Source of the DNA: Podarcis erhardii
Lineage: Eukaryota
Length of the DNA stretch: 64,000 nucleotides
Assembly: GCA_964252035.1 (NCBI GenBank)
Contig: OZ176203.1
Reading direction: 5' to 3' (one strand)
Made by a program: the position numbers and the translations under genes. Positions 11,061 to 28,310 of this stretch are shown piece by piece. The notes beneath the pieces were generated by a model that was given only the letters and a program-made list of their open reading frames with translations, was not told where the DNA came from and did no database searches. Position 1 is the stretch's first letter, and every line of letters begins with the position of its first letter.

Positions 11061-12094
11061 TTATAGACCTGTTTTCAAGCTGTAAGCAACCTCATCAGTA
11101 CCATTCACTGCACACTTACTGCATAGATAAACACCAGACTTAGAATGGCTTCAACAGTTATTCCATCTTCCATGAGAGCTGTAACAGGGTGAGGTATCTC
11201 TCACAGGCAACTCTTAGAACTATCACCCTGCAACACTTCCCAGAAAACTGTAGTAGAATACATGGGAATTAAACTGGTATGTGGTTTTTCAATCAGCTTG
11301 AGAGGCAATAGCCCCAGTCTAACAAAAGAGCTGCTTCTGCACAGTTTTCCTTGTTGGACCAGTAGCTGCGTACCCAGGGCATTTCCACGCAAATGGCTTA
11401 CATCTGCTTGGGCCTCATTCAGCTCTGAATACCAAATGTGCCTTGGCAAGAATTCACCTCCCTCCACTCTCTCTGCCACATAAACAACACCACACTTAAA
11501 CATAAATAGTGCAAGACAGGCTCAAGGGTGGTTTATGACCCTTGATGCTTGGAAAGAGCCACATTACAATGCACTGATGCAAGAGGATGGTTATGAAATC
11601 TAACTCAACCAGATTGTGCCTTGGATTTTGCAGTTCCATATTTTCCAGCACGGTTTCCAGATTAGAACTTGGCAAGGCGAATTCCAGAGGAGTATTTTTT
11701 AAAAAATTTGCCCGGCGGCAAACTAAACTGCTAAAGGTTTGAAAGAATGGTTTTCTTCTGTTTTAAAGAAAATGTTACAGATGTGCAATGGTGAAATGAT
11801 TTATTATTCATAATAATGATCTATATCCCACCTTGGAAGATACAAATCCATCTAAGATAACTTACAAGTAAAATCAAAACACAGTAATAAAATATTGGCA
11901 CATAACAAGTCAGCAGAATCTTTCCCACAATGCAGTTGGTGTACGCTGGCTCAGAGGGAAGAGGACAGTTCAAAAGGAGCCAGCATCTGGTGTTCTATAT
12001 CCCTGCCTCCTTTGCCTCTTCCCCCCCCACAGGGATATGTTGGAAAATGGTCCCAGGGCAATGGGATAGTTCAGCAGGAACAGATACCTTATAC

Positions 12095-18020: not shown

Positions 18021-19282
18021 CAATATTTTTTTTATAGTCACAGAAATTGCTTTTTAACATAAAACGTTTGTTAAAGTTCTCAACAGCAATAGTAACTCAG
18101 GTTGTGCTAAAATAATGCCTCAAAGGGGACATTTATCTCAGGCAGGTTTTATTTCAAAGTGCAAAGAGTCTCATCAAAATGCATTGGGAACCATATCAAT
18201 TGGTAGAGCATGTTTGTTCGTTTGTTTGTTGGGGGGGAGGGGTTTAAAGGATGGGCAAATCCCAGAAATCTGCAGTGCCTTGAGGATCATGGATCAGGGC
18301 AGTTCCTGAGCTAACAATGGGAAACCCTTCAACCCAATCAGCTTATAGCTTTTGAAAGGAATTTTAGCCTTTCTCTATTAACTACCCCAGCCGGTATTTT
18401 CTTGACATTTTTCAGATAATGACAATGAGGGGGGAGGACACCTCTCTCTCTGAAACCTCAGAGTATTAAATGTGCATTAGGCTATCACTCTGCACTTGAC
18501 TGCCAACTTGCCAAGTGCTGGCCTTCCTGCCCTCTTTGACTTCCACCTGCCTGCCTGCCATCTGCTTATCTGTTCCAGGTACTTGCCAGCTCTCGGACCT
18601 GAAAGCGTGTCACCTCCATTGTGGCTCAAACTACTGCTGGGCCTTCGCAACATAATTAATACAAAACTACTGCCAGCCATGTGCACAGTTTAACAATGCA
18701 TGGGACTCGACAGTGGCATCTGGGCATGCACGAAGGCCTGAAAAAGTCAATCACACATCAGCACTGTGTTTCTTTGACCACATCAACAGCAAGCAGCATT
18801 CCAGGTCACATCATGCATCCGATGAAGTGGGCTTTAGCTCATTAGTGCCCACAAAACAATATGTTTTGTGCAGCAAGAGGAAGGCATATGGAGATTCACA
18901 TCTGGAGGGAAGTAGCCCAATGGCAGTAGTCATTTACACTGTGGGTGAGCCTGCAGAGAACTCACAGCATCTTCGGACCATAGGACAGTAAATGCAGTTT
19001 CCTCTTACAGCTTTGCTTGAGTATACAAGCAAACACTTGTCAGTGCTGGGTCTCTTTGTGCATCCCCAGATTTAAGTGTGGAAAACATTCTGGCTTCTGC
19101 AATTCACTGTGGAGTTTGGGCAGGCAGAGCAGAACTTCATTTGCTATTGACTAAAATGGTAGGGAAACCAGGTAGTTGCATATATTCCTATCTAAACCAT
19201 ACTGTGTTTTTCCATGTATAAGACGCCCCCATGTATAATACCCTTATTTTTTTTAACCCAAAGTTAAGAAAACAAAACCCTA

Positions 19283-19693
19283 AGACTAGGGCCCTTCAGG
19301 ATTTAACGTCCTTCCGTTGGGCCTGTAAGAGCTATTCTGCCTGACCTTTAATTTGAATTCAGCCTGATCTTTTATTTCCCTTCTCTTTCCTCCCCCTCCC
19401 CTTTTATGAAGATTACCCGCTCTGAGACCCCACAGCTAATTCCCCCCTGGCCTCCTTGCTGGCCCAAGTAGGACCAATTCAGCCAGCTAGCCCTGGGGAT
19501 TATCTAATCCTTATTAGATGAATTTCCCCCAAATTGATTTCTGAACTTTGAAATTTATTGTTATTCATGCTTTTATACTGTATTTTATGCTGCTTTTACA
19601 ATTAAGTATTTTAAATTTGTTGTTAGCCGCCCTGAGCCCAGTTTTTGAACCGGGAAGGATGGGGTATAAATAAAAATTTATTTATTTATTATT
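19283..19693 (+). mobile_element. L2-clade LINE 3' end
   Basis: Ends GTTAGCCGCCCTGAGCCC...GGGGTATAAATAAAAATTTATTTATTT, like the other L2 tails in the window. Confidence 0.65.
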
Positions 19694-19763
19694 AAAATAG
19701 AAGTGAAAATCTGGATGGTCTGTGGCAGCAAGTTTATCTTTTGGGGGGGAAGGGCAATCGCCT

Positions 19764-19922
19764 TCAAGTTTTGAACTGGCCACTGACTCTGCCTGTGATT
19801 TTATCAACCTCAGAAATATTCATTTGGATGGAGGCATGGTCTTTAGCACCAATTATCCAGTTGCTAGCAGAGCATTTACGAGGAAGGTAGAGATCCACAA
19901 ATTCCCCAGCGTCGTTCTGCAT
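19764..19922 (-). pseudogene. RPS21: Processed (retro)copy of 40S ribosomal protein S21 (eS21), codons 1-52 then a stop
   Basis: Minus strand translates as [52 protein letters not shown], matching the vertebrate RPS21 N-terminus. It is contiguous across positions that carry introns in the parent gene. At 52 aa it falls below the shortest ORFs in the track (60 aa). Confidence 0.95.
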
Positions 19923-20001
19923 TGTGTTTTTCTAGGGTTTTGCCACAAGTGACGTGCAACAGGAAATTTCTCCTCACACACCGTGAGCCCAGGCCGGAAA
20001 A

Positions 20002-20350
20002 GGGACGCGGGTGGCGCTGTGGGTTAAACCACAGAGCCTAGGACTTGCCGATCAGAAGTCGGCAGTTTGAATCCCCGCGACGGGGTGAGCTCCCGTTGCT
20101 CAGTCCCTGCTCCTGCCAACCTAGCAGTTCGAAAGCACGTCAAAGTGCAAGTAGATAAATAGGTACCGCTCCAGCGGGAAGGTAAAAGGTGTTTCCGTGC
20201 GCTGCTCTGGTTCGCCAGAAGCGGCTTAGTCATGCTGGCCACATGACCCGGAAGCTGTATGCCAGCTCCCTCGGCCAATAAAGCGAGATGAGCGCCGCAA
20301 CCCAGAGTCGGTCATGACTGGACCTAATGGTCAGGGGTCCCTTTACCTTT
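20002..20350 (+). mobile_element. Sauria SINE
   Basis: Full length, GGGACGCGGGTGGCGCTG ... CCCTTTACCTTT. Sits within the 5' extension of the RPS21 retrocopy. No clear TSD. Confidence 0.95.
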
Positions 20351-20827
20351 AATCACCTCCAGCATGAGGAGCATGCAGTGCACCGTGGTGCAGAAGCAAA
20401 GGCAGCGGTTGGGGTACCGCAAGCTCCACCTTGATGGCAGCTGCTGCTGTGGGGAAGTAAGCGGAAGGAGGTTCCCAAGGAGGATACCAAGGAGGAGCTG
20501 GGGGGAGGCAGCGCCCACTCTGCGCCGGGCCCTGCCGTCAAGGAAACTGAGCTGAGGAAGGTGGTGAGCGGGCTGGGGGCAGGGTGGGAGTTTGAGAGGG
20601 GAAGGGGGGGGGAAGGAAAGAAGGGCAGGGAGAGGTAGCTGAGGCAGCTGAGGCAGCGGCGGTGGCAGCTACTTTTCCTCCGGTGGTCAAGCCAACGGGG
20701 TTTCAGTAGGCAAGCTAATCGTCAGCATGCAGCCCGGAGGGGGAGGAAAAAGGGGGACTATTTTTTTTTAGCAATGCGGTATTTTCATGGTTTAACCTAA
20801 CCAAGTAGTGAGTAGCCGTTGATTTGC

Positions 20828-21297
20828 GATGGTCCCTAGTTTTTCCATTGACAGAATACTTAAATTCCCCTTTCAATAAAACTTGCTAAACTGTTTTTTT
20901 CTGTAATCCTGTATAGCAGATATTGATGCCTTTATCAGCATATCATTACACAAAATTGTGATGGTATCAACAGTTTCTTCTTCAGCACCTCGATTCTTTG
21001 CTGTCTGTGGGGGAAACAAGCCCTAAATTCACTGCTAAGAAAGTAAGCAGAACTATTATTATGTTATAAACATGATGTAATGTAGTTCCGTTTGTGAGTA
21101 ACATGGCCATTCCTAGTAGTTGATATAAAACAACAACAACAATTTTATTATTTATACCCCACCCATCTGGCTGGGTTTCCCTAGCCACTCTGGGTGGCTT
21201 ACATTACATAAAAAAATTTAAAACATTAGACATTAAAAATTTCCCGATGCAGGGTTGCCTTCAGCTGTCTTCTAAAAGTCAGATAGTTGTTTATTTC
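20828..21297 (+). repeat. Direct duplicate (about 470 bp) of 25784-26622, lacking the SINE present there
   Basis: Colinear sequence from GATGGTCCCTAGTTTTTCCATTGACAG to GTCAGATAGTTGTTTA, roughly 90% identical by eye. Includes an L2 tail. Confidence 0.95.
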
Positions 21298-22189
21298 GTA
21301 AAAATGTGGTATTTTCAAGCCATTTCCTTAACCCTTCAATCTCTGTTGTGCACTGTGTGCATTGGTTGTTAATAAAATAAACAACAATAACCCTATAAGA
21401 TATTTTGTATTCAGGTTGCACTAAAGGCTGCTTTTAATGTTTGCCATCAAACACTCCATCTATATACGCTGTCACAGCAATATATTTATGCAGTGACAGT
21501 TGACCCTGTTATGTTGTATTTGCTCCTGCTAAGAGGAAAAAAAGACATCCAGGTGCGAAAGGCCGTTGAACTAGATCACTCTGACACCTATCACACTTGA
21601 TCTATGGCACTGATGTTTTCATTAGGTATTAACTGAACAACCTGCACCATATGGTTCCTGTAGTATTCAAATGCTTGAAGGTAAAAATTATTTTGTCTGC
21701 CCGGATGGTGAATGTCCACTTTAACTTTCACAGCCTCTTTGAGTGCTAATTAGTTCACACTTTGATGCCAGCTTGCAGAGATGTTACTTTTTTATTATAA
21801 TCCCTTTAATATAATTCTACTCTGAGCTTTTTGGCCTCAGAAGCAGCTCACGTTCTGTGAAGCATACCAGAGGATGTAAGTCTTTTCATCCTGATCCAGC
21901 TTGATGCATATTACAATCAGGAGCCGGATTTTCATCCAAATGCACATCCAGTTGAAAGTAATGCAGTATGAACGGACAATATCAACATCAGAACACAATC
22001 TAATTTACATCCGTGGTACCTAGGGCACAATCCATAGTTCCTCACAGTGTTCGAAACTCCCATTGTTCTAGGCGCATGTTGTGACAGGGAATTTCATTAG
22101 CGCAATCAGTTTCTGAGCTCTGGGTGCAGTCCTGCACCTAAGATTTTGGATTAAAACTGCAGAGTGGGAGGAAAGGAGGACCTTTTTCT

Positions 22190-22433
22190 GCCAGTGTGGT
22201 GTAGTGGTTAAGAGCGGTAGACTTGTAATCTGGGGAACCGGGTTCGCTTCCCTGCTCCTCCACATGCAGCTGCTGGGTGACCTTGGGCTAGTCACACTTC
22301 TCTGAAGTCTCTCAGCCCCACTCACCTCACAGAGTGTTTGTTGTGGGGGAGGAAGGGAAAGGAGAATGTTAGCCGCTTTGAGACTCCTTCGGGTAGTGAT
22401 AAAGCGGGATATCAAATCCAGACTCCTCTTCTT
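22190..22433 (+). mobile_element. tRNA-derived SINE (Squam2-like)
   Basis: Near-identical to the copies at 3344 and 61346. Confidence 0.85.
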
Positions 22434-23089
22434 CCCCACTTCCAGGTACTCTCTGAAGACTAAAGAAGAGACCCCCTTAAGAATATTAGGGGGGTGAGCA
22501 GGGGAAAGACTAGACCATGTGAAAAATGAACGTAATATTTTAGCTGTAGTTCATTCATTTTCAGCTTGATATTCTTGTTATAAAAAAGCGTACCTGGACA
22601 TTCTGTTACTGCACCCATAACCTAGGTTTAAGGTGCCATTTAGCTCCTAGCTTCCATCTCTCAGTTTTTAACACTAGTTCATTGTTTAGTAAGTGATGGC
22701 TGTGTGGAAATCTGTTTCTGATGTAGATCTCTTTATTTGATTTGGAGCTCTTTCACTTATGCATAATGTAATCTTGGTCCTGAAAAGGAGATCGACTTGC
22801 CAAAATGCTTGTTGATGACATTTACTGGCATGTCATGTATTTTGGGAATGTGTATCTGAAGGTGCGTCTCCATCCATATTGCAGTCCCACTACAATATGC
22901 ACAACTGGAACCATCTCAGGCATGCTTCTCTATAGACTCTTACACTTTCATGTTGGGTGTTAACTTGTGTGTTAGTTGTGGCTACTGTTCATTAAACACT
23001 TTTCAAAGATTTGTGCAGAACTTATACAAACCAGATTTTAGGGTTTTACCTCCAAGCTTACAATCTAAATGTGGGCGAGAAATCTCCCT

Positions 23090-25330: not shown

Positions 25331-26051
25331 TAGCTCAGTGGATGTTACCTTTCCTGGCACCAGCTACCGAAATTCCTTCTTCTGCACAACCATGACAACT
25401 ACAAGTACACCACCCCTTTCTGTCTGCTCGGGCTCAAACTTAGCGAACCTGAAAAATCCAGGAGTGATCCTTCTTTCTCTTTGCTGCCCACATTCATATC
25501 ACTAGATATGCTTTGTGAGAAGTTAAGGAGGACCAGTTATTGAGTAACATGTGGCAGCTTGGTCTGACGTTAGTTCTGGCATCTCAGTGTGAGATCCACC
25601 CAGCAGGATTTTTGCACCAGTTACCAAAATCTACATCAAATGCAGGATTATGTGAAAACATCAGCAGTTTCCCAGCCCCTGTTGATAATATATGTGCTAA
25701 TAAATTTCACAGGCAAAGACAACATAATGCAGATTTCTCCCCTGAAGAGAGGAGGTTGGCAATCTGTCTTTGTGAATATTTATGATGGGTCCCTAGTTTT
25801 TCCATTGACAGAATACTTAAATTCCCCTTTCAATAAAACTTGCTAAACTGTTTTTTCCATAATCCTGTAAAGCAGATATTGATGCCTTTATCAGCTTATC
25901 ATTACACAAAATTGTGATGGTATCAACAATTTCTTCTTCAACACCCCGATTCTTTGCTGTCTGTGGGAGAAACAAGCACCCCTTCAGATGCAAAGTTCAC
26001 TGCTAAGAAAGTAAGCAGAATATTATTCTGTTATAAACATGATGTAATGTA

Positions 26052-26402
26052 GGGACGCGGGTGGCGCTGTGGTTTAAACCACAGAGCCTAGGACTTGCCA
26101 ATCAGAAGGTCGGCGGTTCGAATCCCCGCGACGGGGTGAGCTCCCGTTGCCTGGTCCTTGCTCCTGCCAACCTAGCAGTTCAAAAGCACGTCAAAGTACA
26201 AGTAGATAAATAGGTACCGCTCCAGCGGGATGGTAAACGGCGTTTCCGTGCACTGCTCTGGTTTGCCAGAAGTGGCTTAGTCATGCTGGCCACATGACCC
26301 GGAAGCTGTACGCCGGCTCCCTCGGCCAATAAAGCGAGATGAGCGCCGCAACCCCAGAGTCGGTCACAACTGGACCTAATGGTCAGGGGTCCCTTTACCT
26401 TT
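26052..26402 (+). mobile_element. Sauria SINE
   Basis: Full length, TSD AATGTA. The empty site is visible in the duplicate at about 21075-21085. Confidence 0.95.
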
Positions 26403-26452
26403 AATGTAGTGCCATTTGTGAGTAACATGGCCATTCCTAGCAGTTGATATAA

Positions 26453-26721
26453 AACAACAACAACAACAACATTTTTTTTATTTATACCCCACCCATCTTG
26501 CTGGGTTTCCCCAGCCACTCTGAGCGGCTTACATAAAAAATTGTGAAACATTAGACGTTAAAAAATTCCCATTACAGGGTTGCATTCAGATGTCTTCTAA
26601 AAGTCAGATAGTTGTTTAGTTCCTTGACATCTGATGGGAGGGCGTTCCACAGGGCGGGCGCCACTACCAAGAAGGCCCTCTGCCTGGTTCCCTGTAACCT
26701 CCCTTCTCGCAGTGAGGGACC
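26453..26721 (-). mobile_element. L2-clade LINE 3' end
   Basis: (AAC)n tail, TTTATACCCCACCCATC..GCTGGGTTTCCCCAGCCACTCTG, body homologous to 56458-56891. Confidence 0.9.
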
Positions 26722-26769: not shown

Positions 26770-27180
26770 TTGCCATAGCCTCCAAGGAGAGCCTAACAAA
26801 ACTCCCTTCCATATGGAAAATATCCACTTCATCTGGGGCTTGGAGTGTGGTGGTGTTTGCCGCATGTTGTGGCTTCAGCTGGTCCGAGGAGGCTGCCATC
26901 TTCCTGCACATCTGGGGGAGGGGAAGGTCACCTGATGCCACCCATCTCAGCCATCCCAGGCCTTCCCAGGTGTGGTTGGGCATCACTGGCAAGGCCAATC
27001 GTGGCAAAGGTCCTGGGCGCTGCCCCCAGCCTGCCCCTGGGGTATTTAAGGGAGTACAGGCCACCTTCTTTGCTGTCGCCAATCAAAGGCCACAGCTCTG
27101 TAGAGCCAGCATGGCGACTCACTACTTGGTTAGGTTAAACCATGAGAAAAGCCCCTCTGGGTGTTATTACAGCTTCTGTG
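26770..27180 (+). mobile_element. LTR-like fragment (family unresolved)
   Basis: GC-rich block with CCAAT (GGCCAATC) and TATA-like GGTATTTAAGGG. Ends not defined. Confidence 0.3.
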
Positions 27181-27711
27181 TGGAGAACTACCTCCTAGAT
27201 GCATCTTTTGGTTGCCTCCGTATGGGGTCTATAAAATACAAAGAAATCCTGAGGTTTCACATGTCAGTGTTTCTTTTCAAACACTTTTCATTTATTTTTT
27301 AACAAAACCTGCTTAAGAAGTCCCTCAGATGTTCACTGAACATCTGTACCAATTTCCAGTTATTGATTGCAGCCCCTTCCATTTTTTAAAATTCATTTTC
27401 ACACATCAGTCGGATTTTCTAAGGACATCAAAATGATGGTCATTCTGACTGAAGTTTTGTTTTCCTTTCCTCATCCCATGTGTTTTGAGAGAGGTAGAGG
27501 AGGGAGCATCTAGTTTAGCTAACATTATTTTACAGCAGGGGCAAGATAAAACTATTTTCTGTACACCAACACTCTTGTCAGGCTACTGTGCCAGCATGCA
27601 GTTTGACCTACCTGATGCTTTTGAAATAAATAGAGTTGTAAACTCAATAGTGACTTTAAGAACATTGAAATGGGAGGAAATTACTTTAGGCAAAAAGTAC
27701 AATTCTTATTA

Positions 27712-28310
27712 GGGACGTGGGTGGCACTGTGGGTTAAACCACAGAGCCTAGGACTTGCCAGTCAGAAGGTCGGCAGTTCGAATCCCCACAACGGGGTGAG
27801 CTCCCGTTGCTCGGTCCCTGCTCCTGCCAACCTAGCAGTTCGAAAGCATATCAAAGTGCAAGTACAGTGGTACCTCGGGTTACAGGCGCTTCAGTTTACA
27901 GACGCTTCAGGTTACAGACTCCGCTAACCCAGTAATAGTACCTCTGGTTAAGAACTTTGCTTCAGGATGAGAACAGAAATCGTGCTCCGGCAGCATGGCA
28001 GCAGCAGGAGGCCCCATTAGCTAAAGTGGTGCTTCAGGTTAAAAGAACAGTTTCAGGTTAAGAACGGACCTCCGGAACGAATTAAGTACTTAACCCGAGG
28101 TACCACTGTAGATAAATAGTTACTGCTCCGGAGGGAAGGTAAGCGGCGTTTCCATGTGCTGCTCTGATTCGCCAGAAGCGGCTTAGTCATGCTGGCCACA
28201 TGACCCGGAAGCTGTACGCCGGCTCCCTCGGCCAATAAAGTGAGATGAGCGCCGCAACCCCAGAGTCGGTCACCTCTGGACCTAATGGTCAGGGGTCCCT
28301 TTACCTTTAC
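27712..28310 (+). mobile_element. Sauria SINE split by a MITE
   Basis: 5' part 27712-27864, 3' part 28109-28310. TSD CAATTCTTAT at 27700-27709 and 28831-28840. Confidence 0.95.
27865..28108 (+). mobile_element. Tigger-like MITE family A inserted into a Sauria SINE
   Basis: TIRs, with duplication of the TA in the SINE sequence AAGTA|GATAAATAG. Confidence 0.95.

What the first reader, a model, noticed from the sequence alone, without database searches (positions are those of the whole stretch)
19761..21339. Hidden RPS21 retrocopy that is 3'-truncated, lacks poly(A) and is 5'-extended
Seen: intronless RPS21 codons 1-52 on the minus strand, open from the ATG (19922) to a TGA (19764-19766) supplied by flanking DNA. 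The last ~30 codons, 3' UTR and poly(A) are not nearby. Upstream on the same strand are a pyrimidine-rich TTTCCTGTTG (possible TOP start), CACGTCAC, TTCCGG and about 430 bp of GC-rich sequence. A 7-bp repeat CCTTCAA (19761-19767, 21333-21339) brackets the whole unit. Known: L1-made retrocopies are normally 5'-truncated and polyadenylated. Inference: an upstream-initiated, spliced RPS21 transcript was internally primed by microhomology, either by non-L1 LINE machinery or during RNA-templated break repair, and brought the parent's CpG-island promoter with it. It could yield an antisense transcript in GPC6 or a truncated eS21 peptide.
Basis: partly seen in the sequence, partly recalled or inferred. 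Interest (0 to 1): 0.7.

Follow-up and report, generated by a model that had tools for sequence, protein, structure and literature searches.

The report
Tail-less RPS21 retrocopy fused to SINE
A lizard intron holds the first 236 bases of a spliced ribosomal-protein S21 mRNA joined head-to-head to a complete Sauria/Squam1 SINE, probably one unusual insertion event; the supposed copied promoter is unrelated local DNA, so this is a decaying pseudogene fragment of mechanistic interest only.

Summary
The core observation holds. The minus strand (20000->19766) carries an intronless copy of RPS21 exon 1, exon 2, exon 3 and the first 43 nt of exon 4. It gives a 52-codon ORF closed by a TGA made with flanking DNA. 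There is no poly(A) tail, and the rest of the gene is absent from the whole 64 kb.

The "5'-extension" is refuted. Against two Podarcis parental loci, the copy starts in the pyrimidine tract at the start of parental exon 1, where an independent Lacerta retrocopy also starts. The next base upstream is the first base of a full-length Sauria/Squam1 SINE (20001-20350, + strand). The GC-rich 20354-20787 matches the 7.8 kb upstream of the parental exon 1 no better than shuffled sequence. The CCTTCAA bracket is chance-level.

Best reading (about 0.55): one composite event. A Bov-B-mobilised SINE inserted normally, and the opposite DNA end primed on RPS21 mRNA inside exon 4. Both cDNAs ran to their RNA 5' ends and were joined, as in twin priming but with two RNAs.

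The weak point is the flanking repeat, which is only 9/12. No outgroup or read data could be obtained, so a deletion-plus-coincidence history (about 0.3) is not excluded. Substitutions look neutral (4 non-synonymous, 1 synonymous). This scan had not noted the composite before.

The parts
19766..19808 (-). RPS21 exon 4-derived segment: the first 43 nt of a 72-nt exon. Ends at codon 52 plus the first base of codon 53.
   Evidence: Aligns to L001 13091-13133. The parental exon 4 runs on to 13162.
19809..19872 (-). RPS21 exon 3-derived segment.
   Evidence: Aligns to L001 ~11537-11600. The parent has the donor GTGAGT immediately after.
19873..19969 (-).
   Evidence: 98/99 identical to L001 9952-10050.
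19970..20000 (-). RPS21 non-coding exon 1-derived segment. It starts in the parental pyrimidine tract CTCTCTTTCCGGCC.
   Evidence: Aligns to L001 7798-7828, followed in the parent by the donor GTGAGG. The independent Lacerta retrocopy L003 starts within 2 nt of the same point.
19764..19922 (-). 52-codon ORF (truncated eS21). The stop TGA is made of one RPS21 base plus two flank bases.
20001..20350 (+). Full-length Sauria/Squam1 SINE: head (A)GGGACGCGGGTGG, tail (ACCTTT)2. It lies head-to-head with the RPS21 fragment. Base 20001 could belong to either element.
   Evidence: Family features from PMC13295347 and PMC10670947.
19755..19766 (+). Left copy of a possible degraded target-site duplication (CAATCGCCTTCA). 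Bases 19766-19768 (AAG) are the 1-3 nt shared with the RPS21 mRNA (CTT).
20350..20361 (+). Right copy of the possible target-site duplication (TAATCACCTCCA). It starts TA, as in other copies of this SINE.
20362..20772 (.). G-rich (on the + strand), low-complexity block. It is pre-existing target DNA and not RPS21 promoter. Its identity is otherwise unknown.
   Evidence: No Pfam hit for its ORFs and no Rfam hit.
20773..21317 (.). Separate, older insertion (20788-21302) flanked by 15-bp direct repeats (20773-20787 and 21303-21317, 14/15). It copies 25778-26052 plus 26402-26622, and a 36-bp piece of 27113-27148 inverted.
21333..21339 (+). A chance match.

Best explanation
One composite retrotransposition event. 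A Sauria/Squam1 SINE RNA was inserted by target-primed reverse transcription by its partner LINE (Bov-B, RTE clade), starting at the T/A site at 20350/20351 and running to the SINE's first base. The other DNA end of the same break (top strand, ending ...CCTTCAAG at 19768) annealed by 1-3 nt (AAG with CUU) to an RPS21 mRNA inside exon 4 and primed a second reverse transcription, which ran to the mRNA's 5' end. The two cDNAs, each ending at the complement of an RNA 5' end, were then joined. This is the geometry of twin priming, but with two different RNAs.

It accounts for four features at once:
- the missing 3' part and poly(A) tail;
- the complete 5' end;
- the opposite orientation with 5' end against 5' end and no filler;
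- the absence of a TSD around the SINE alone.

Shown: the anatomy, the exon structure, the 5' and 3' limits and the SINE identity. Inferred: that it was a single event, which enzyme acted, and the priming step. The product is a neutrally decaying pseudogene fragment.
For: - Precise intron loss, a start at the beginning of parental exon 1, and an end in mid-exon 4.
- The SINE is full-length at both ends, and its first base is adjacent to the first base of the RPS21 copy.
- Six other full-length copies of this SINE in the window and in L001-L003 all have clean TSDs (mostly 11-14 nt) starting TA. This copy has none on its own: no exact repeat of 5 nt or more relates 19975-20006 to 20340-20385 apart from one off-position 5-mer.
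- The flanks of the composite match 9/12 and all three mismatches are transitions. The null is 2.5%, or 0.4% when transitions-only is required. The right copy starts TA, and a T-run lies 13-16 nt upstream of the left copy, near the published Tn-TA signature.
- CpG decay is similar in the two parts: SINE 8 of 31 lost, RPS21 4 of 10 lost.
- A normal lacertid RPS21 retrocopy (L003) has a 3' UTR, an A-rich tail and a 15-nt TSD, so the window copy is a different kind of product.
- Precedent: antisense-oriented tRNA, 5S and mRNA segments in L1 chimeras are attributed to twin priming (PMC13174262). About 70% of 5'-inverted L1 copies show 2-5 bp of microhomology at the 5' junction (PMC2912911).
Against: - There is no clean TSD. 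Three mismatches in 12 is more than expected, because SINE copies with more CpG decay keep perfect TSDs.
- Both flanks belong to one low-complexity G-rich domain, so chance resemblance is likelier than my null suggests.
- The RPS21 part has 4 private non-deamination changes in 236 nt, against 0 in 349 nt of SINE (p about 0.03). This hints that the RPS21 part could be older.
- It also keeps the ancestral CAG TTC (Gln49 Phe50), where the Podarcis parents and a Lacerta retrocopy have TGC.
- The T-run is 3 nt further from the putative nick than in other copies.
Confidence: 0.55

Rival explanations
1. Independent events. An ordinary, full-length, polyadenylated RPS21 retrocopy (L1-type) inserted first. 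A later deletion removed its 3' third, tail and downstream TSD. A Squam1 SINE later landed by chance at its 5' boundary, with loss of its own TSD (an insertion-associated target deletion).
For: - The RPS21 part shows more non-CpG change than the SINE, and it carries an older parental codon state.
- Squam1 is dense, about one copy per 12-14 kb. Across thousands of retrocopies in a genome, a few boundary coincidences are expected.
- Sen et al. warn that random 3' deletions mimic tail-less insertions unless the pre-insertion site is reconstructed (PMC1920257).
- P0001 of Podarcis muralis shares Trp22 and runs on to about codon 64. If it is the orthologue, the copy was once longer.
Against: - It needs three events and two coincidences: a junction within +/-1 nt of both elements' first bases, and the only TSD-less copy among seven SINE copies examined.
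- No remnant of an RPS21 3' part, tail or L1-type TSD exists in the window.
- Trp22 is a CpG transition and is easily recurrent.
- P0001 differs at 7 of the 52 shared residues and could not be located.
Confidence: 0.28
2. Break-repair capture without LINE endonuclease. Two free cDNAs (SINE and RPS21 5' part) were ligated or copied into a spontaneous double-strand break in the G-rich block. This parallels endonuclease-independent L1 insertion, and it is the reader's second alternative.
For: - No clean TSD, a 3'-truncated tail-less mRNA copy, and microhomology at the junction. These match three of the four criteria used for non-classical L1 insertions (PMC1920257).
- The target is G-run-rich and low-complexity, and a second templated insertion lies 420 bp away.
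Against: - The SINE has its exact family 3' end, (ACCTTT)2, placed at a T/A step as in endonuclease-dependent copies.
- The flanks resemble each other 9/12, which a break without staggered nicks does not predict.
Confidence: 0.13
3. An upstream-initiated RPS21 transcript was retrocopied and carried the parental CpG-island promoter (20351-20787 plus 21318-21332), bracketed by a CCTTCAA TSD.
For: Only the presence of GC-rich DNA on the same strand and the 7-bp repeat.
Against: - The GC-rich block has no similarity to 7.8 kb upstream of exon 1, or to intron 1, in two Podarcis parental loci. Local alignment scores were 13-19, against shuffles of up to 18.
- The real parental promoter sequence directly upstream of the exon 1 pyrimidine tract (…GAGTGACGTTCGGT) is absent.
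- CpG o/e is 0.45.
- A full-length SINE would have had to land exactly at the start of exon 1.
- The 7-mer is chance-level.
Confidence: 0.02

Closest known systems
Twin priming / 5'-inverted L1 insertions (Ostertag and Kazazian 2001, as described in PMC2912911)
   Same: Two segments lie in opposite orientation. The 3' segment has a normal 3' end at the nick. The inverted segment starts at an internal RNA position with short microhomology to the target's top strand. The junction is formed between two cDNA 3' ends.
   Different: The classical case uses one RNA for both reactions, is made by L1, and has a normal 10-17 bp TSD. Here there are two different RNAs, the enzyme is probably RTE-clade Bov-B, both cDNAs reach the RNA 5' ends, and the TSD is at best degraded (9/12).
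Antisense RNA/LINE-1 chimeric insertions in mammals (PMC13174262, Cell Genomics 2026)
   Same: A second cellular RNA (tRNA, 5S, some mRNAs) is joined in antisense orientation to the 5' end of a retrotransposed element. The authors explain this by twin priming on a different RNA.
   Different: Those chimeras involve L1 itself and are in mammals. The antisense mRNA cases there did not include a first exon. Here the partner is a SINE in a lizard, and the mRNA segment starts at exon 1.
Endonuclease-independent / non-classical L1 insertions (PMC1920257)
   Same: 3' truncation, no poly(A) tail, no clean TSD, junction microhomology.
   Different: The criteria were defined for L1 fragments, with pre-insertion sites verified in outgroups. 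Here the companion SINE keeps a canonical 3' end at a T/A site, and no pre-insertion site is available.
Ordinary L1-type processed pseudogene (for example the Lacerta agilis RPS21 retrocopy, L003)
   Same: Intronless and derived from the same gene. It starts within 2 nt of the same point in exon 1.
   Different: L003 has the whole coding region, the 3' UTR, an A-rich tail and a 15-nt TSD. The window copy has none of these.

Membership tests
RPS21 (eS21) processed retrocopy | Sequence derived from the eS21 gene | tested here: met
   Pfam PF01249 E=3.7e-23. 88-90% aa identity to lacertid eS21 proteins. 226 of 236 nt identical to the Podarcis exons.
RPS21 (eS21) processed retrocopy | Introns removed exactly at the parental splice sites | tested here: met
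   Four blocks spread over 5.3 kb of L001 are contiguous in the window. Parental GT donors and AG acceptors lie at the block ends.
RPS21 (eS21) processed retrocopy | 3' poly(A) tail | tested here: not met
   The copy ends in mid-exon 4 at 19766 and is followed by non-A flank. No RPS21 3' part occurs in the window.
RPS21 (eS21) processed retrocopy | Target-site duplication flanking the retrocopy itself | tested here: not met
   No repeat relates 19735-19775 to 19996-20030 beyond one 5-mer.
Sauria/Squam1 SINE | About 350-nt dispersed element with the family head and an (ACCTTT)n tail | tested here: met
   Five copies in the window and more in L001-L003, at 77-94% identity (most 88-94%). All have the same head and tail. 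The tail is as published for Sauria_POM. Squam1 is the same family as Sauria. No reference consensus was available to align.
Sauria/Squam1 SINE | About 12-nt TSD beginning with T(A) around the element | tested here: not met
   Met by six other copies. Absent around 20001-20350 alone.
Twin-priming type composite insertion | Two retro-copied segments in opposite orientation, joined at the ends that correspond to cDNA 3' ends | tested here: met
   The RPS21 5' end (20000) abuts the SINE 5' end (20001/2), on opposite strands, with no filler.
Twin-priming type composite insertion | Microhomology between the target's top-strand end and the internal priming site | tested here: inconclusive
   1-3 nt (AAG with CTT at 19766-19768). 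This is compatible, but too short to be significant.
Twin-priming type composite insertion | One TSD flanking the whole composite | tested here: inconclusive
   9/12, with all mismatches transitions. Null 2.5% or 0.4%. No exact run of 5 nt or more.
Twin-priming type composite insertion | Both segments derive from the same RNA (classical definition) | tested here: not met
   The segments are a SINE and an mRNA. It therefore works like twin priming but is not the classical form.
Twin-priming type composite insertion | Single event, shown by an empty site lacking both parts | not testable with these tools
No lizard genome search tool is available.
   No BLAST hit. Local alignment is no better than shuffles.

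The most novel reading that the evidence does not exclude
The reverse transcriptase of an RTE-clade LINE (Bov-B), which normally needs its own 3' recognition sequence, can copy an unrelated cellular mRNA when the second DNA end of a SINE insertion primes on it. That would give squamates a non-L1 route to tail-less, 5'-complete gene fragments. If it recurs genome-wide, such SINE-plus-mRNA head-to-head composites would form a distinct class of retrocopy.
Probability: 0.35. Interest if true: 0.5.

Novelty: new variant of a known kind. Interest (0 to 1): 0.3.

Why it matters
The locus itself is a neutral pseudogene fragment in an intron and has no evident function.

Its value is mechanistic. If it arose in a single event, it extends heterologous twin priming from mammalian L1 to a SINE driven by an RTE-clade LINE in a reptile. 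Heterologous twin priming was proposed only recently, for L1 chimeras. The locus would also show how 3'-truncated, tail-less retrocopies can arise without L1.

It is also a caution for retrocopy annotation. GC-rich DNA next to a retrocopy is not evidence of a copied promoter until it has been aligned to the parent locus.

Tried and rejected
- Searched the whole window by tblastn and blastn for the missing RPS21 3' part. None was found.
- Aligned the GC-rich block to both parental loci on both strands. The result was noise.
- Scanned ORFs of the GC-rich block against Pfam, and 18500-22500 against Rfam. Nothing was found.
- Ran ARAGORN on the SINE. No tRNA was called.
- Looked for exact TSDs under three models (SINE alone, RPS21 alone, composite). 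None of 5 nt or more was found in the right place.
- Template switching from SINE RNA to RPS21 mRNA was rejected on geometry. It would put RPS21 on the same strand as the SINE, with its internal breakpoint, not its 5' end, against the SINE head.
- Tried to fetch P0001 (P. muralis, Trp22, 65 aa) as a possible orthologue. It is not on record.
I did not use read laying.
- The host gene identity (GPC6) was not tested.
- The relative age test was inconclusive. The CpG clock gives equal ages, while non-CpG changes suggest that RPS21 is older (p about 0.03).
Full report
**What is there**

The minus strand from 20000 down to 19766 is an intronless copy of the 5' 236 nt of an RPS21 (eS21) mRNA. The ORF 19922->19764 encodes 52 residues and matches Pfam Ribosomal_S21e at E=3.7e-23. 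Its best protein match is a Podarcis muralis eS21-like protein, so the window comes from a lacertid lizard.

I fetched the parental gene of Podarcis raffonei (L001) and P. muralis (L002), each with 10 kb of flank, and an independent retrocopy from Lacerta agilis (L003). The window copy matches L001 in four blocks spread over 5.3 kb:

| Exon | Window coordinates |
|---|---|
| Non-coding exon 1 | 20000-19970 |
| Exon 2 | 19969-19873 |
| Exon 3 | 19872-19809 |
| First 43 nt of exon 4 | 19808-19766 |

The parental GT donors and AG acceptors lie exactly at the block ends. The comparison was made exon by exon.

The parental exon 4 continues for another 29 nt, so the copy stops in mid-exon at codon 52. 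The stop codon is one RPS21 base plus two flank bases. There is no A-run after it. Neither codons 53-83 nor the 3' UTR occur anywhere in the 64 kb.

**The 5' end**

The parent reads …GAGTGACGTTCGGT CTCTCTTTCCGGCC…GAGGAG|GTGAGG. Exon 1 is therefore a roughly 32-nt leader that starts in a pyrimidine tract. I take that tract to be the TOP-type transcription start. This is inferred from the sequence and from where retrocopies begin; the start site itself was not mapped.

The window copy begins at (T)TTTCCGGCC, in that tract. The independent Lacerta retrocopy begins within 2 nt of the same place. TTCCGG is in exon 1. The copy is 5'-complete and not 5'-extended.

**What lies upstream**

The next base (20001/20002) is the first base of a full-length SINE on the opposite strand (20001-20350). 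It occurs five times in the window and several times in L001-L003. All copies share the same head, (A)GGGACGCGGGTGG, and an (ACCTTT)1-2 tail.

Those features match the published description of Sauria SINEs, including Sauria_POM of P. muralis: an (ACCTTT)n tail, TSDs of about 12 nt beginning with T, and the RTE-clade Bov-B LINE as partner (PMC13295347). Sauria is the same family as Squam1, which has 107,000-131,000 copies per Podarcis genome (PMC10670947).

Beyond the SINE, 20354-20787 is G-rich on the + strand, with 61% GC and a CpG o/e of 0.45. It has no BLAST match to either parental locus, which cover 7.8 kb upstream of exon 1 and all of intron 1. Its local alignment scores fall within the range of shuffled sequence.

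It copies DNA from 5-6 kb downstream in the same window (another note of this scan, s1-215003, flagged it).

The CCTTCAA pair is chance-level. The 7-mer occurs 8 times on the + strand of the window, and two 60-bp zones share an exact 7-mer in 16% of random placements.

**How it probably arose**

Three anomalies coincide:
- The mRNA copy lacks its 3' third and its tail.
- The mRNA copy and the SINE meet first base to first base, on opposite strands, with no filler.
- This SINE copy has no TSD of its own. Six other full-length copies examined all have clean TSDs (mostly 11-14 nt) starting TA.

A single event explains all three. In this model the SINE RNA is reverse-transcribed from the bottom-strand nick at 20350/20351. 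The top-strand end (…CCTTCAAG, 19768) anneals through 1-3 nt to CUU inside exon 4 of an RPS21 mRNA and primes a second cDNA. Both cDNAs run to the 5' ends of their RNAs and are then joined.

This is the geometry of twin priming (PMC2912911). Its use of a second, unrelated RNA has recently been proposed for antisense tRNA, 5S and mRNA segments in mammalian L1 chimeras (PMC13174262). Simple template switching is excluded. It would place RPS21 on the SINE's strand, with its internal breakpoint against the SINE head.

Three observations are consistent with one event:
- The flanks of the composite resemble each other. CAATCGCCTTCA (19755-19766) and TAATCACCTCCA (20350-20361) match at 9 of 12 positions, and every mismatch is a transition. 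The null is 2.5%, or 0.4% when transitions-only is required.
- The right copy starts TA, like other copies.
- CpG decay is similar in the two parts: 8 of 31 sites lost in the SINE and 4 of 10 in the RPS21 fragment.

**Why confidence is only about 0.55**

- The putative TSD is poor for an insertion of this age. SINE copies with more CpG decay keep perfect TSDs.
- The two flanks belong to one low-complexity G-rich domain, which inflates chance similarity.
- The RPS21 part carries 4 private non-deamination changes in 236 nt, against none in 349 nt of SINE (p about 0.03).
- It retains the ancestral CAG TTC (Gln49 Phe50), whereas both Podarcis parents and the Lacerta retrocopy have TGC. Either the copy is older than the SINE, or the window species' own parent gene differs from the Podarcis genes.
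- A P. muralis protein (P0001) shares the unusual Trp22 and runs on to about codon 64. If it is the orthologue, the copy was once longer and was cut by deletion. It could not be located. Trp22 is a recurrent CpG transition, so this is only a lead.
- Sen et al. stress that random 3' deletions mimic tail-less insertions unless the pre-insertion site is reconstructed (PMC1920257). No tool here searches lizard genomes by DNA.

A break-repair capture of two cDNAs without LINE endonuclease remains a sub-variant, at about 0.13.

**Function**

Relative to the parents, with changes polarised by L003 and by other vertebrate eS21 proteins, the coding part has four non-synonymous changes (V13L, R22W, V42I, N47S) and one synonymous change. 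That is a neutral pattern for one of the most conserved ribosomal proteins.

No promoter was imported, and the SINE's Pol III promoter points away from the ORF. An intact 156-nt ORF at about 4% divergence is unremarkable. Expression could not be tested. The host gene (GPC6) was not verified.

**Verdict**

The promoter-carrying 5' extension is refuted. The idea of internal priming by non-L1 machinery survives in a different form.

The locus is most likely a heterologous twin-priming product of a Bov-B-driven Squam1 insertion. That is a new variant of a known kind, of modest and purely mechanistic interest. An empty-site comparison is still needed.

Noticed in passing
window 20773-21317 (source 25778-26052, 26402-26622, 27113-27148): A 515-bp insertion flanked by 15-bp direct repeats AATG[C/T]GGTATTTTCA (14/15). 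It copies two stretches that, at the downstream source, are now separated by a Squam1 SINE. Here the SINE's 8-bp TSD (21078-21085) is present only once, so the copy preserves the source's pre-SINE empty site. A 36-bp piece matches 27113-27148 inverted. Identity is 87-90%, so it is older than the RPS21/SINE event.
   Followed up: partly
P0001 (UniProt A0A670HNN6, Podarcis muralis): A 65-aa eS21-like protein that shares the unusual Trp22 with the window copy but continues to about codon 64. It is either the orthologue of this locus in a longer state or an independent retrocopy with a parallel CpG hit. No contig is on record.
   Followed up: partly
L001 13091-13162 and L002 equivalent (parental exon 4): The functional eS21 of Podarcis has Cys50 (TGC) where other vertebrate eS21 proteins in the alignment have Phe. 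The Lacerta agilis retrocopy also has TGC. The window retrocopy keeps Phe (TTC) and CAG for Gln49.
   Followed up: partly
L001 16183-16836 (minus strand): A single-block gene call of 217 aa with Ribosomal_S13_N and Ribosomal_S15 domains lies 1.5 kb downstream of RPS21 in P. raffonei. It is possibly an RPS13 retrocopy next to the RPS21 parent. No such call is listed for L002.
   Followed up: no
window 19722-19754 and 20395-20675: The target DNA is a G-run-rich, low-complexity block with degenerate internal repeats (AGCTGAGGCAGC(G/T)G and GCTGGGGG(C/G)AGG). Two unusual templated insertions lie within or beside it, so it may be a break-prone site.
   Followed up: no
window 27711-27864 and 28108-28309: The two halves of another Squam1 SINE are separated by about 243 bp, presumably a later insertion into the SINE.
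   Followed up: no
window 19643-19653 and 19769-19779: TTTTGAAC[C/T]GG occurs both in the TE left of the locus and at the very start (on the + strand) of the RPS21 fragment. It is probably chance, but it lies close to the 3' breakpoint.
   Followed up: no
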